DNA from: Octopus bimaculoides | Taxonomy: Eukaryota | DNA length: 64,000 nt | NCBI RefSeq assembly: GCF_001194135.2 | Contig: NC_068997.1 | Span: forward strand, 11,242,793 to 11,306,792 | Direction: 5' to 3' | Shown: positions 16,710 through 50,600 of the stretch, in pieces | How positions within the stretch are numbered: the stretch's first letter is position 1 | Layout of the letters: the number at the start of each line of letters is the position of its first letter | The notes under the pieces: generated by a model | Database searches by the model: none | Seen by the model: only the letters and a program-made list of their open reading frames with translations | What the model was told of the DNA's origin: nothing | Translations under genes and position numbers: made by a program

Positions 16710-17186
16710 ACATATGTATTCTCATGCATAAAGTTCCATATTTAGACATGCTCATATGTACTTAAATAATAAACTTCTGGAAAATTTTACAGATTTTTAC
16801 AGTTCTATTTATGGATTGGGTCCCTAGTCTTTCTGGGGATGAGACGCCTAATTTCTGAAGATTAGTATTTAGGCAGTGTGTTACATATGCTACTGCACCA
16901 ATAATTAAAGGTATAAACCTGAGGATAGAGTAAATGCAAATTTCGCAATAGTTCAGCGTAGGTATTTTCATTTTCGCTTACCTTTATTTTTATATTAACA
17001 TCCGCTCGACAGCGAATTTTCAAAACTGTACATAATTTCTCTTCCAGTCCCTGATCATTATATCAGGTCTCTTATGTTTAAATTTTATTGAGGGTTTTAA
17101 CCGGGTCTTTCCACCAGTTCTTTGTTTTATTATGAGTAGCAATAGCCTCCACATTGCTGAGGGTTCTTCGGGGTTATCCTTCCGAT
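16710..17186 (-). mobile_element. RLE non-LTR retrotransposon family 1, 5'-truncated, endonuclease domain plus 3' UTR
   Basis: frameshifted translation RKDNPE..VEAIATHNKTKNWWKDPVKT/SIKFKHKRPDIMIRD/EEKLCTVLKIRCRADVNIKIKVSENENTYAELLRNLHLLYP/RFIPLIIGAVAYVTHCLNTNLQKLG..TVKICKIFQKFII* (stop 16762-16764); RPD at 17062-17070. Confidence 0.8.
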
Positions 17187-17193
17187 GGATGGA

Positions 17194-17345
17194 TGTATAG
17201 TATGTATGCATGATATGTGTGTATGTGTGTAAGTATGTATGTATGTATGGATTATGTATGTATATGTATGCATTCATGCATGTATGTATGTATGTATGCA
17301 TGTATGTATGTACGTATGTATGTATGTATGTATATATGTATGCAT
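17194..17345. repeat. imperfect (TATG)n / (CATA)n microsatellite
   Basis: direct reading; adjoins the 5' end of the minus-strand RLE element. Confidence 0.95.
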
Positions 17346-28433: not shown

Positions 28434-29132
28434 TCTATGTCACCCTCACTCACCCATTTTAACCCTCCCATAGACATACTCACTTTCTATCTATCCCTCT
28501 TCTCATGTATCCTAATCTCTCTTATCAAGTAGTCCGTTCTTTTTCCCGCACGTATATTATCACATTTTCTTCCAGTGGTTCCTGTTTATATATTTCTTAC
28601 TAATATATTGCTATTAGGTACAGCATCATTCCAATGACCTAAATCATTTGGTATCAGAGCATATACAACCATTTTATATCCATCAATTTCTAAGCGTTAT
28701 GATCTTGCTCTCTTGTTCTGCTGGATCTCAAAAGTGCAATATTTTTACAATCAAATGAGTTATGTGTTAAGTCCTCATTCAACATGCAGGAAAGAGTGGT
28801 GATATCGCCTTTAGACTATATTCTTCTATCTTTAATACAGTAATATATTCAATGATTTACTCGAAGAACTTTCTCCGTAGGCATATATGAATGACACAAC
28901 TCAGGTGATTTTTCTTCATTTGCTTAACTGACCGTGGTTCACCTGCTGCCGAATGACGGCAATAAAGCAATAAAACCAAGAAAGTTCTTGGTTTTTCATC
29001 GACTTATAAACTACTATGCCAATGGCAACTTTTATATGAAAGCATATATCATATATACACCAAGAATTTCAATTTCATCAATATATAACACTTGCACCCG
29101 AAAATGCGCGCACACACACACATACACAATCA

Positions 29133-29160
29133 CACATACATACATACATACATACATACA

Positions 29161-29196
<36 letters not shown>

Positions 29197-30703: not shown

Positions 30704-31343
30704 TTATGTATGCATTTATATATGTGTGCGTGCGTGTGTATGATATCTTTTTCCTTAACTCTTGATATAACTGCAGAAGCACTAAAGTTATATAAGGATT
30801 CTCTTGGGAATATCAGCAAAGAAACACCACTCCCTTCCACGGTTTGTTTGCAAGCAATGTCTTTCCTTTATCTCCTTAGGCAGCGAGAAGTAGATGTGTG
30901 TATAGAGAGATAGATAGATAGACAAATATAGTAAGAGAGGCTGAGACAGAGATAAGCAGCGAGAAAGAGAGATAGAGGGACTGGTAGAGAGAGTGGTAGT
31001 GAAAATAGGTGAAAGTTGGTATTTACGTATAAACTTTTTCTAAACAGAAAAACAGATATCATGTTACAATTAATTCCAACAATCTTGGTGCGGCGCATTT
31101 TGTCTATAGAAATATTTTCCAAATTATACATGCATTTAACAAACGTAAATTGGCCAATTTCATTAATAACAACAACAACAATAATAATAATAGTAATAAT
31201 AATTTCTTAAATACATGTTTTACCTGTGAATTTGCGTGTGTAAACTGGGAATGCATACAGCGAGTTTCTCTGCCCTAGGTGTATGGACAACACTCGGCGA
31301 GAAATGGAAGAAAATTTGAAGAAAGAAGAAAAAAAAACTAATG

Positions 31344-31407
<64 letters not shown>

Positions 31408-31408
<1 letters not shown>

Positions 31409-31486
31409 TGCCAGGCTTGTCCATCGGACACTTTGCAACAAGTATGGACTTGACAGAGCAAAAAATTGGTACGACCACAAACCTGA
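31408..31486 (+). mobile_element. duplicate of the first 80 bp of RLE family 2 element (probable assembly overlap)
   Basis: identical to 31722-31800; ends at a 10-N gap. Confidence 0.6.
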
Positions 31487-31540
31487 NNNNNNNNNNAGAA
31501 ATGGAAGAAAATTTGAAGAAAGAAGAAAAAAAAACTAATG

Positions 31541-31604
<64 letters not shown>

Positions 31605-31657
31605 TAATAATAATAATAATAATGATAATAATAATAATAATAATAATAACAATAATG

Positions 31658-31720
<63 letters not shown>

Positions 31721-31722
<2 letters not shown>

Positions 31723-32250
31723 TGCCAGGCTTGTCCATCGGACACTTTGCAACAAGTATGGACTTGACAGAGCAAAAAATTGGTACGACCACAAACCTGA
31801 AGTCATTGTCGAAAATAGAAATGTAGAGATCCTATGGGATTTTATGATGCAGTGTGACCATGTGATTGAGAATAGGAAGCTGGATATTGTTTTCTCTTAA
31901 TTGAGAAAGAAAACAAACTATGCTGGATCATAGACATAGCATGCCCAGCTGACAACAAGGAAGAAAGAAAAGTCGAGAGATATGACAGGTTAGCTTGGGA
32001 AGTTAAGCAGTTGTGGTCGATGAAACAGGTAGTTGTAGTGCCAATAATTGTCGGAGCCCTGGGAATAGCGAGCAGAAATCTCGAGAAGTACGTGGAACAA
32101 ATAGGGGCTGCAATAGAGTTGGAGCACTTGCAGAAAATTGCACTGCTTGGAACCGCTCGAATACCCCGGAAGGTGCTCGAAAAATAAGAGGTGCTACCTT
32201 AGTTCACTGGTAGTAAACAACTGACACTGTCATACATCTCCAGCGCTAGT
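31721..32250 (+). mobile_element. RLE non-LTR retrotransposon family 2 (R4/Dong- or HERO-like), 5'-truncated
   Basis: IARLVHRTLCNKYGLDRAKNWYDHKPEVIVENRNVEILWDFMMQCDHVIENRKLDIV/LIEKENKLCWIIDIACPADNKEERKVERYDRLAWEVKQLWSMKQVVVVPIIVGALG..LQKIALLGTARIPRKVLEK* (stop 32185-32187); one frameshift, catalytic PD altered to LD. Confidence 0.9.
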
Positions 32251-44610: not shown

Positions 44611-45430
44611 TAATGTGTGTGTGTGTGGGGGGGGGGTTAATAGACACAGTGTGTTCAATTTATATTTTAGAAATTCACATTGAATGACCGAGGAAGTTAA
44701 TTCTATCCCACTGTGTGACTTTGAGCAACTAGCATTTTCTGGTCGATTCCATTACTCTCTGCTGTTTCTCGTTCAACAAGGAGGGGGGGGGGGATCACCT
44801 GAACTACGAAATAAATAATCGCATGAATTAACATGTACACAACTGAGCATTCCAGATGTTGATCTCTAAGCTAATTTTTAGGCAGAGCTGGTGTAAAATA
44901 TTTTTTTGTGAAAGAGCTTTCCGTTTTCAATTACGTACAACCTATATGTAGCGATTTTTACAGATGATTTGACAGTGAAGATGCAACTTGCTGTCCTTCA
45001 GGGAAATCTATCGGAGCGAACTTAAGAGTAATGTTTAAAGTCATTTATTGCTCTAATAGATTCCGGGGTATCGAAAGTTATATCGGGGAAGGAGTGGTGA
45101 GATCTGAGTTTAATTATGCGCCTAATCAGTTTCTCTGTATTGTGCTCTCAGAACACTTGGCAATATTTGTTTTGCGTCTTCCTTGCTATATCTATTGGCA
45201 TTATTATGGAGAAAACTATTTATCATGAACTACTGGGCCGATGGGAGAATCCGCAGACCCAATTTCGTTGGTAAATGATTACAACAATTTTGGTTTGTGT
45301 CCCATTTTCTCAGTAGCGCAATCCTCCTCTGCAAATTTTTATTTAAGCTTACATACATACATACATAGATAGATACATACATACATACATACATAAATAT
45401 ATATATATACATACATACATAAATAAATAA

Positions 45431-45469
<39 letters not shown>

Positions 45470-49596: not shown

Positions 49597-49700
<104 letters not shown>

Positions 49701-50139
49701 NNNNNNNNNNNNNNNNNNNNNNNNNNNNNNNNNNNNNNNNNNNNNNNNNNNNNNNNNNNNNNNNNNNNNNNNNNNNNNNNNNNNNNNNNNNNNNNNNNNN
49801 NNNNNNNNNNNNNNNNNNNNNNNNNNNNNNNNNNNNNNNNNNNNNNNNNNNNNNNNNNNNNNNNNNNNNNNNNNNNNNNNNNNNNNNNNNNNNNNNNNNN
49901 NNNNNNNNNNNNNNNNNNNNNNNNNNNNNNNNNNNNNNNNNNNNNNNNNNNNNNNNNNNNNNNNNNNNNNNNNNNNNNNNNNNNNNNNNNNNNNNNNNNN
50001 NNNNNNNNNNNNNNNNNNNNNNNNNNNNNNNNNNNNNNNNNNNNNNNNNNNNNNNNNNNNNNNNNNNNNNNNNNNNNNNNNNNNNNNNNNNNNNNNNNNN
50101 NNNNNNNNNNNNNNNNNNNNNNNNNNNNNNNNNNNNNNN

Positions 50140-50320
50140 ATTTCAAGATCTTTATATTTGCTCAGTTTTTGGTAGGTCTTGACAGATACGTTTATATCGA
50201 TTGGGACAGTCATATCAATGAGGAGGCATGATTTTTGTCTGAAGTCTTTCAGTATGATGTCTGGCCTATTTGCGTCTATCTTTCTGTCAGTTTGAATGCT
50301 GAAGTTCCAGAGGAGTGCAA
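50140..50320 (-). mobile_element. RLE non-LTR retrotransposon family 3 (R4/Dong-like), 5'-truncated, 3' part hidden in gap
   Basis: open frame IALLWNFSIQTDRKIDANRPDIILKDFRQKSCLLIDMTVPIDINVSVKTYQKLSKYKDLE with an intact RPD..D..P..K..KY..L endonuclease signature. Confidence 0.9.
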
Positions 50321-50380
<60 letters not shown>

Positions 50381-50405
50381 CATTATTATTATTATTATTA
50401 TTATT
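50321..50405. repeat. (ATT)n microsatellite at the RLE 5' junction
   Basis: direct reading. Confidence 0.95.
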
Positions 50406-50600
50406 AGGAGAGCTGGCTGGAGGGAATGCTTAGCGGTATTTCACCCGTTGCTCCGATCTGATTTCAAACTCCACCGAGGTCGACTGTTCCTTTTTAGCAT
50501 TTCGAGTTCGAGAAAATAAGTACCATTCGAAGACTAGGGTCAATGTAATCGATTCTTCCCCTTCCCCAGAATTGCAATATTTGAAGTCATTATTATTATT
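50405..50600 (+). mobile_element. SINE family A, degenerate
   Basis: GAGAGCTGGC..AATGCTTAGCGGTATTTC..CCGAGGTCGAC..AATAAGTACCA..ATGTAATCGA. Confidence 0.75.

What the first reader, a model, noticed from the sequence alone, without database searches (positions are those of the whole stretch)
16710..17345. RLE retrotransposon whose 5' junction sits on a (CATA)n tetranucleotide array
Seen: a minus-strand RLE domain (RPD at 17062-17070, C-terminal FIP.IIGA motif, stop 16762). Its truncated 5' end joins directly to a ~150-bp (CATA)n/(CATC) tract, and its 3' UTR fades at ...GAGAATACATA (~16713), one more unit of the same motif. Established: RLE elements are often sequence-specific, and Bombyx Dong (R4 clade) targets (TAA)n. 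I know of no described (CATA)n-targeting RLE family. Inference: a tetranucleotide-specific family. With the two (TAA)n-associated families in this window, this suggests microsatellite motifs are partitioned among RLE lineages in this genome.
Basis: partly seen in the sequence, partly recalled or inferred. Interest (0 to 1): 0.7.

Follow-up and report, generated by a model that had tools for sequence, protein, structure and literature searches.

The report
Retrotransposon fossil targeting CATA microsatellites
A broken, front-truncated copy of a jumping gene sits directly against a CATA-repeat tract, and about fifteen related copies from other genomes are placed the same way, so this lineage appears to insert specifically into that repeat, a target not found described for this type of element in the papers searched.

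Summary
Window 16713-17202 (minus strand) is a dead, 5'-truncated copy of a non-LTR retrotransposon with a restriction-like endonuclease (RLE). It keeps the last ~146 codons (KRPD at 17062-17073, ADVNIK, IPLIIGA, stop 16762-16764) and a 49-nt 3' UTR ending in ...GAGAATACATA. Its 5' end abuts a sense-strand (CATA)n array that runs to 17342.

The "(CATC)" units are probably element coding sequence (Y-T-S-I-H-R-K-D against Y-N-A-I-R-R-K-D in relatives). That puts the junction near 17203.

The tetranucleotide-target inference holds. Eleven of 12 visible 5' junctions and 11 of 15 visible 3' junctions carry sense-strand (CATA)n arrays. These come from about 16 copies in the window and 12 fetched loci, including three independent copies of one family and two of another. 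No antisense array occurs in any locus.

Full-length relatives are about 4 kb. They have one ORF of about 1,100 aa: a conserved N-terminal helical domain, RT, a CCHC motif and the RLE.

Two Dong-like RLE fragments in the same window abut sense-strand (TAA)n instead, which fits lineage-specific targets.

Closest by machinery is Dong/R4. Closest by target is Waldo, an APE-type element on (ACAY)n. No searched paper describes a (CATA)n-specific RLE lineage. Repbase and Dfam could not be searched.

The parts
16713..16761 (-). 3' UTR of the element (49 nt), ending ...ATGAGAATACATA. The terminal ACATA is the only CATA-type unit at this copy's 3' junction.
   Evidence: DNA alignment with the O. vulgaris copy L001. 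Homology ends here, and L001 continues with (CATA)n. The motif TATGAGCATGTCTARATATG occurs once in the window and once in L001.
16762..17202 (-). Degenerate, 5'-truncated ORF remnant: the last ~146 codons plus the stop codon, covering the region downstream of the CCHC motif and the restriction-like endonuclease (RLE). Contains KRPD (17073-17062), ADVNIK, SENENTYAE, IPLIIGA, TVKICK and stop TAA 16764-16762. At least 4 frameshifts and in-frame stops. The catalytic E of the I-E-x-S motif reads K.
   Evidence: Translations and motif coordinates. blastp to P0002, P0017 and P0001. Matches to an HMM of full-length relatives at 16771-16923 and 16904-17044. RLE alignment.
17203..17342 (-). (CATA)n microsatellite on the element's sense strand, read as (TATG)n/(ATGT)n on the plus strand. 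It abuts the truncated 5' end and is the remaining upstream part of the inferred target array.
   Evidence: TRF array 17185-17342, period 4, 39.8 copies. Sequence read on the minus strand. Perfect runs at 17233-17333.

Best explanation
Window 16713-17202 is a dead-on-arrival, 5'-truncated and since decayed copy of a non-LTR retrotransposon of the RLE type. Its lineage inserts specifically, and in one orientation, into (CATA)n (= ACAT) microsatellites.

Shown in relatives: active elements are about 4 kb. They have a 5' UTR of about 40-330 bp and one ORF of 1,058-1,164 aa. The ORF holds a conserved N-terminal ~60-aa helical domain, a reverse transcriptase, a CCHC motif and a C-terminal PD-(D/E)xK-type endonuclease with K/RPD...E-x-S...K. 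The 3' UTR is about 50-570 nt and always runs into CATA units.

Inferred from the R2 paradigm of target-primed reverse transcription:
1. The protein recognises the repeat, possibly through the N-terminal domain.
2. The RLE nicks the (TATG)n strand.
3. The freed 3' end pairs with the CAUA units at the RNA 3' end and primes cDNA synthesis.
4. Synthesis often stops early, giving 5'-truncated copies whose 5' end is joined back to the upstream part of the same array.

The window copy is one such truncated product and has no function now.
For: 1. Identity as an RLE LINE.
- Homologues of the fragment continue upstream into CCHC and RT (PF00078) in proteins of 649-1,492 aa.
- The best PDB matches of a full-length relative are R2 proteins, through the RT region only (E 2.7e-21).
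- No APE domain appears in Pfam scans or in the precomputed Pfam column.

2. Target.
- 11 of 12 visible 5' junctions carry at least 3 sense-strand CATA units. The twelfth has 1.5 units.
- 11 of 15 visible 3' junctions carry at least 3 units. Three of the other four keep 1-3 or degenerate units (window, L007c, L008), and L003 is only CA-rich and ambiguous.
- These junctions come from the window and loci L001 and L003-L012.

3. Replicates within families.
- Family A (L004, L010, L012) has 99% identical 3' UTRs and the same 3' junction ...TATTTACAAA|(CATA)n. Its 5' ends and outer flanks differ between copies.
- Family B (L007b, L011) is likewise bracketed by arrays.
- 5'-truncated copies with different break points all join (CATA)n: the window, L001, L007a, L007c, L011a and L011b.

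4. Strand.
- In the 12 loci, all oriented with the element on plus, about 38 perfect (CATA)>=3 runs are sense and 0 are antisense.

5. A hint of RNA-target pairing.
- L007b's 3' UTR stops at GAGCTTTA|CATA, while L011 of the same family continues 85 nt from ...TTTACAAAAG. This would fit priming at an internal UACA.

6. Recent activity elsewhere.
- Related protein clusters have 71-389 members at 90% identity or more, on Mb-scale contigs.
Against: - Only two copies of the window's own family were seen: the window and L001 from O. vulgaris. All other evidence comes from related families in unidentified ENA assemblies.
- The window copy has no array at its 3' junction, only ACATA. L008 and L007c are similar, so the 3' part of the target can be very short or lost.
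- Target recognition by the protein was not tested. The N-terminal domain is predicted as three helices (pLDDT 74), but Foldseek found no significant PDB match (best E 2.5) and Pfam found none.
- No cleavage site or target-site duplication can be read from a microsatellite target.
Confidence: 0.85

Rival explanations
1. Specificity comes only from the RNA tail. The elements carry a (CATA)n 3' tail and nick DNA without sequence preference. Insertion succeeds wherever the nicked strand can pair with the tail, mostly in existing (CATA)n arrays or in the tails of earlier copies and SINEs. The protein does not recognise the repeat.
For: Every 3' UTR ends in CATA units. L007b differs from L011 in a way that suggests priming at an internal UACA. 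Arrays are shared between neighbouring copies: L007a/L007b and L011a/L011b. No DNA-binding fold could be confirmed for the N-terminal domain.
Against: In published work, R2 and Dong/R4 elements are thought to recognise their sites through an N-terminal Myb-type domain (PMC7998251). The N-terminal domain here is conserved across families that share the target, with invariant W24, W55 and P60. Strict strand polarity and long upstream arrays not preceded by any element 3' UTR (L010, L012, L004) fit either model. This rival changes the mechanism, not the conclusion that (CATA)n is the target.
Confidence: 0.25
2. The arrays were born from the elements after insertion. A short CATA-like stretch at the element ends expanded by slippage, so the repeat is a product of the element and not its target.
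For: Non-LTR tails are a known source of microsatellites (PMC3812793). The window copy has only ACATA at its 3' end.
Against: Arrays of up to 415 bp lie upstream of full-length 5' ends and of 5'-truncated ends with different break points. There the element has no CATA-like sequence that could seed them.
Confidence: 0.05
3. Chance juxtaposition in a very microsatellite-rich genome.
For: TRF gives 70 rows in 64 kb, and there are four ACAT-class arrays in the window.
Against: Perfect CATA-class runs cover only about 0.5% of the window. The same juxtaposition, always in sense orientation, recurs at more than 20 junctions in 12 other loci.
Confidence: 0.01

Closest known systems
Dong (R4/Dong clade of RLE non-LTR retrotransposons; Bombyx mori, Anopheles gambiae, Biomphalaria glabrata, ostracod Dong)
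   Same: Single ORF with RT, then a CCHC motif and a C-terminal restriction-like endonuclease. No N-terminal zinc fingers. A short conserved N-terminal helical domain, reported as Myb/SANT-like in R4/Dong (PMC7998251). Orientation-specific insertion into a microsatellite, so copies are bracketed by the repeat (PMC3812793, PMC7998251). Dong-like fragments on (TAA)n occur in this same window.
   Different: The target is the tetranucleotide (CATA)n, not (TAA)n. In a crude RLE-domain tree the (CATA)n-linked sequences cluster apart from the window's (TAA)n-linked fragments. Placement inside or outside the R4/Dong clade by RT phylogeny could not be tested.
Waldo (WaldoAg1, WaldoAg2, WaldoFs1; R1 clade)
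   Same: Sequence-specific insertion into ACAY microsatellites, the same motif class as (CATA)n (PMC3812793).
   Different: Waldo is an APE-type element with an N-terminal apurinic/apyrimidinic-like endonuclease. The elements here have a C-terminal RLE and no APE domain. The shared target would therefore be convergent.
R2 (28S rDNA-specific RLE element, solved structures 8gh6, 8ibw, 9nl2, 9dou)
   Same: RT plus C-terminal CCHC and RLE. The best PDB sequence matches of a full-length relative are R2 proteins (E 2.7e-21 to 2.9e-14). R2 is the paradigm for the target-primed mechanism assumed here.
   Different: Similarity is confined to the RT region (query 259-707). There is no N-terminal zinc finger, no rDNA flanks, and no HDV-like ribozyme detected by Rfam at the 5' ends.
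Other microsatellite-specific RLE families: Togen on (TG)n in fish, and some HERO families of the leech Helobdella
   Same: RLE-type elements reported as microsatellite-specific (PMC4640811, which cites Repbase Reports 2014 for HERO).
   Different: Togen targets (TG)n. The motif of the leech HERO families is not given in any text I could read. Relationship by RT phylogeny was not testable here.

Membership tests
RLE-encoding non-LTR retrotransposons (R2 group: R2, R4/Dong, HERO, NeSL, CRE) | Reverse transcriptase domain of the non-LTR type | tested here: met
   The RT is absent from the window copy because of 5' truncation. Homologues that share its RLE continue into PF00078 RVT_1 (E 3e-27 to 9e-37; precomputed PF00078). 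PDB matches are to R2 RT.
RLE-encoding non-LTR retrotransposons (R2 group: R2, R4/Dong, HERO, NeSL, CRE) | CCHC motif and PD-(D/E)xK restriction-like endonuclease C-terminal to the RT | tested here: met
   The window has KRPD...ADVNIK...IPLIIGA. Relatives have C-x2-C-x7-H-x4-C followed by RHD, K/RPD, I-E-x-S-C-P-x-D-x-N and E-K. There is no Pfam model for this domain.
R4/Dong clade | Groups with R4, Dong and Rex6 in an RT phylogeny | not testable with these tools
   No named R4, Dong, HERO or NeSL reference sequences could be obtained. Only an unrooted NJ tree of the RLE domain without references was possible.
R4/Dong clade | N-terminal Myb/SANT-like domain without zinc fingers (PMC7998251) | tested here: inconclusive
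   The conserved N-terminal block has invariant W24, W55 and P60 and no Cys/His finger pattern. AlphaFold2 predicts three helices, pLDDT 74. Foldseek against PDB gives no significant hit (best: a homeobox at E 2.5; Timeless DNA-binding domain at prob 0.38). Pfam gives none.
R4/Dong clade | Target is 28S rDNA (R4) or (TAA)n (Dong) | tested here: not met
   Flanks are sense-strand (CATA)n in the window and in all 11 loci that show a junction with array sequence.
R2 clade | N-terminal zinc finger(s) plus Myb, and insertion in 28S rDNA | tested here: not met
   No zinc-finger motif at the N-termini of full-length relatives. No rRNA match in any locus by Rfam. Similarity to R2 proteins is limited to the RT.
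HERO clade | Groups with HERO elements in an RT phylogeny | not testable with these tools
   No reference sequences were available. Some leech HERO families are reported as microsatellite-specific (PMC4640811), so HERO membership cannot be excluded.
Waldo / R1 clade (APE-type, (ACAY)n-specific) | N-terminal apurinic/apyrimidinic-like endonuclease | tested here: not met
   Pfam scans of full-length relatives show RVT_1 only, plus zf-RVT in some, and no Exo_endo_phos. The endonuclease here is the C-terminal RLE.

The most novel reading that the evidence does not exclude
A so far undescribed, widely distributed and recently active clade of RLE-type non-LTR retrotransposons is specific for one strand of (CATA)n tetranucleotide microsatellites. 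This would be convergent with the APE-type Waldo elements. In octopus genomes the clade coexists with (TAA)n-specific Dong-like lineages, so related endonuclease-bearing LINEs would divide the genome's simple repeats among themselves as separate safe havens.
Probability: 0.45. Interest if true: 0.6.

Novelty: new variant of a known kind. Interest (0 to 1): 0.5.

Why it matters
Microsatellite-specific RLE elements are known, Dong on (TAA)n being the standard case. How such elements change targets is poorly understood.

A sister set of lineages with the same architecture but a different target, some with hundreds of near-identical copies, gives a natural comparison. Target choice could be mapped by comparing or swapping the N-terminal domain, the RLE and the 3' UTR tail.

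It would also show that ACAT-class repeats were adopted independently by RLE-type and APE-type elements.

Finally, it adds candidates to the catalogue of site-specific retrotransposons now being surveyed for targeted DNA insertion (PMC13580325).

For the window itself the practical result is ordinary. The feature is a non-functional transposon fossil that should be masked.

Tried and rejected
- Pfam and PDB sequence searches with the window peptide gave nothing meaningful. There is no Pfam model for this RLE.
- blastn and tblastn of the fragment against the window found no second copy of the family. The 3' UTR motif occurs once.
- The first word-indexed homologue search with the raw repaired peptide found a single protein. 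Adding the O. vulgaris copy as an alignment was needed to reach relatives.
- Pfam on the N-terminal domain and Foldseek of its model against PDB gave no significant match. The Myb/SANT reading stays unproven.
- An Rfam scan of the window and 7 loci at gathering threshold found nothing. Permissive scans of two 5' UTRs found no HDV-like ribozyme. An R2-like co-transcript and ribozyme processing is therefore not supported, though not excluded.
- Cluster look-up for organism names returned none. The hosts of loci L002-L012 remain unknown.
- ARAGORN does not call the tRNA-like SINE heads next to the arrays.
- Ten literature searches found no paper that links an RLE element to (CATA)n or (ACAT)n. 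Repbase Reports and Dfam are not in the library.
- I considered that the 5' array might be the tail of an upstream copy of the same family. I rejected this for L004, L010 and L012, because the family's 3' UTR occurs only once per locus.

Full report
**What is in the window**

The window is AT-rich (30% G+C), contains assembly gaps and is full of microsatellites: TRF gives 70 rows in 64 kb.

On the minus strand between 17202 and 16765 lies a decayed reading frame. Its pieces read ...YTSIHRKDNPEE / VEAIATHNK / KHKRPDIMIRD / CRADVNIKIKVSENENTYAELLRNL / RFIPLIIGAVAYVTHCLNTNLQKLG...TVKICKIFQKFII*.
- RPD at 17070-17062.
- IPLIIGA at 16914-16894.
- Stop TAA at 16764-16762.

The frame changes at least four times and contains stops, so the copy is dead.

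TRF finds a period-4 array at 17185-17342 with 39.8 copies and 80% matches. On the element's sense strand it reads (CATA)n with variants.

**Is it a real RLE element?**

Pfam and the PDB gave nothing for the fragment alone. The large protein collections did.
- The repaired peptide matches an Octopus vulgaris protein, P0001 (E 1.9e-12).
- After P0001 was added as an alignment, it matched 24 proteins. These include O. bimaculoides XP_014788340.1 (P0017) and two ENA proteins, P0002 and P0003. P0002 is 50% identical over 162 aa (E 2e-46).
- A profile of these proteins finds 4,938 cluster representatives at E <= 1e-3.
- The long hits carry PF00078 reverse transcriptase upstream of the matched region. 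A C-x2-C-x7-H-x4-C motif precedes it.
- Full-length proteins are 1,058-1,164 aa.
- The best PDB relatives are R2 retrotransposon proteins, through the RT only (E 2.7e-21).
- No APE endonuclease domain is present.

The octopus matches suggest that the window comes from an octopod genome.

**Boundaries**

DNA alignment with the O. vulgaris copy (locus L001) shows about 85% identity. Homology ends at ...ATGAGAATACATA, window position about 16713.

It is therefore probably element sequence, and the junction with (CATA)n lies near 17203.

**Test of the target hypothesis**

The O. vulgaris copy is truncated at a different codon and starts at SENENTYAE. It still abuts (CATC)n(CATA)3 on its 5' side. 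It is followed by about 13 CATA units directly after the same GAGAATACATA end.

I then fetched the genomic context of related proteins.
- Family A (L004, L010, L012). The 3' UTRs are 99% identical. The 3' junction is the same in all three...TATTTACAAA|(CATA)n. The 5' ends differ: one is 55 bp shorter, and one has extra bases. Each 5' end is joined directly to 138-415 bp of (CATA)n. The outer flanks differ, so these are separate insertions.
- Family B (L007b, L011a). Both are bracketed by arrays.
- L006 is bracketed by arrays on both sides. L008 has a 186-bp array at its 5' junction and only 2-3 units at its 3' end. L005 and L009 show the 3' array only, because the contigs start inside the element.
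- Further truncated copies also join CATA units at both ends: L007a, L007c and a P0024-like copy, L011b.

In total, 11 of 12 visible 5' junctions and 11 of 15 visible 3' junctions carry at least three sense-strand CATA units. Most of the remaining junctions carry one to three units or a degenerate stretch. The 3' end of L003 is only CA-rich and ambiguous.

With all loci oriented so that the element is on the plus strand, about 38 perfect (CATA)>=3 runs are sense and none is antisense. In the window such runs cover about 0.5% of the sequence. Chance is excluded, and the association holds across a whole clade.

**Mechanism**

Shown:
- The architecture: a 5' UTR, one ORF (N-terminal conserved block, RT, CCHC, RLE) and a 3' UTR that ends in CATA units.
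- Strict polarity of the flanking arrays.
- Invariant 3' junctions and variable 5' junctions.

Inferred from the R2 paradigm:
- The RLE nicks the (TATG)n strand.
- The freed 3' end pairs with the CAUA units at the RNA 3' end and primes reverse transcription.
- Early termination gives 5'-truncated copies such as the one in the window.

One observation fits pairing-assisted priming. L007b's 3' UTR ends at GAGCTTTA|CATA, whereas L011 of the same family continues for 85 nt from ...TTTACAAAAG.

Whether the protein itself reads the repeat is open. The N-terminal block is conserved (W24, W55, P60) and is predicted as three helices (pLDDT 74). R4/Dong elements are reported to have a Myb/SANT-like N-terminal domain (PMC7998251). 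However, Foldseek and Pfam gave no significant match here.

No HDV-like ribozyme was found at the 5' ends.

**Comparison with known systems**

A review lists the microsatellite-specific non-LTR elements known by 2013 (PMC3812793):
- Waldo on ACAY.
- Mino on AC.
- Kibi on TC.
- Koshi on TTC.
- Dong on TAA.

Togen on (TG)n and some leech HERO families were added later (PMC4640811). Dong is reported to target (TAA)n in most insects, molluscs and cnidarians (PMC7998251).

The present lineage works like Dong in its machinery and like Waldo in its target motif. It is neither. The Dong target was tested and not met, and Waldo's APE domain is absent. Clade assignment (R4/Dong, HERO or other) needs an RT tree with reference sequences, which I could not obtain.

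None of the ten full-text searches found an RLE element described on (CATA)n or (ACAT)n. Repbase Reports and Dfam could not be searched, so prior annotation remains possible.

**The partitioning idea**

The window holds two more RLE fragments.
- 31723-32190 (plus strand): its truncated 5' end joins (TAA)n at 31536-31722.
- 50145-50393 (minus strand): it has sense-strand (TAA)n on its 5' side (50321-50406) and again beyond an assembly gap on its 3' side (49599-49700).

In an NJ tree of the RLE domain (about 110-125 aa, no support values), all (CATA)n-linked sequences fall apart from these two. The two group with a coral protein and other sequences.

This fits targets that are specific to lineages. 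For this genome, however, it rests on three copies only.

**Verdict**

The object in the window is an inert fossil.

The family-level finding is a new variant of a known kind, provided that Repbase and Dfam do not already list it. Interest is moderate.

Noticed in passing
window 31536-32190 (+): A 5'-truncated Dong-like RLE fragment reading ...IIDIACPADNKEERKVERYDRLAWEVKQLW...VPIIVGALG...LQKIALLGTARIPRKVLEK*. Its 5' end joins directly to a 187-bp sense-strand (TAA)n array. No (TAA)n is evident after its stop at about 32186.
   Followed up: partly
window 49599-50406 (-): A second, different Dong-like RLE fragment (ANRPDIILKDFRQKSCLLIDMTVPIDINVSVKTYQKLSKYKDLE). Its 5' end joins sense-strand (TAA)n at 50321-50406. 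Its 3' part is lost in the N gap 49701-50139, and sense-strand (TAA)n resumes at 49599-49700. It is closest to a coral (Oculina patagonica) protein, P0281.
   Followed up: partly
window 31300-31486 and 31497-31800: The sequence on both sides of the 10-N gap (31487-31496) is the same stretch: AGAAATGGAAGAAAATTTGAAG...(TAA)n...TTGCCAGGCTTGTCC...CAAACCTGA. This looks like an assembly duplication around a gap, not biology.
   Followed up: no
L001 10001-10327 (Octopus vulgaris OX597824.1): The annotated 'hypothetical predicted protein' P0001 is an annotation artefact. Its N-terminal half translates a (CATC)n microsatellite (HPSIHP...). Its C-terminal half is the truncated transposon RLE.
   Followed up: yes
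L004 12560-12600; L005 3262-3290; L010 6566-6592: A conserved 3' UTR hairpin lies shortly before the CATA tail: GCC..ATCCCA-TTGTT-TGGGAT.GGC in family A and GCC..ATCCCC-GTGTT-GGGGAT.GGC in L005. One base pair differs by a compensatory change. It is a candidate recognition element for the RT.
   Followed up: partly
L007 10352-10968 and 9404 onward; L001 about 9995-10067: Short repeats with a tRNA-like head (box A TAGCTCAGATGG, box B GGTTTGAGCC, judged by eye; ARAGORN does not call them). They lie antisense to the LINE, with both ends against the same (CATA)n arrays. A separate plus-strand repeat ends ...GGTCCCGAATCTCATA(CATA)n (L007 10250-10310 and 11046-11115). The arrays seem to collect several kinds of retroelement.
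   Followed up: partly
L004 8167-8504 and 12766-12870: The same (GATA)n plus a 60-bp unit (ATCAGCAAGGCTGAGTCTCTACTGGACTACACC...GGTGCTGG) occurs on both sides of the element and its arrays. The target array is therefore part of a larger composite repeat.
   Followed up: no
L007 9277-9329 versus L011 6277-6410: Two copies of one family differ at the 3' end. L007b stops at GAGCTTTA and goes straight into (CATA)n. L011 continues for 85 nt before its array. This could be internal priming at a UACA, or a deletion.
   Followed up: partly
P0274: A relative of these eukaryotic LINE proteins is deposited as 'MAG: reverse transcriptase family protein [Cyanobacteria bacterium J06649_11]'. It is probably a eukaryotic contig binned into a bacterial MAG.
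   Followed up: no
window 11726-11750, 29112-29194, 45350-45469: Three further ACAT-class arrays on the plus strand, two of them next to assembly gaps. No remnant of the family's 3' UTR or ORF lies beside them.
   Followed up: yes
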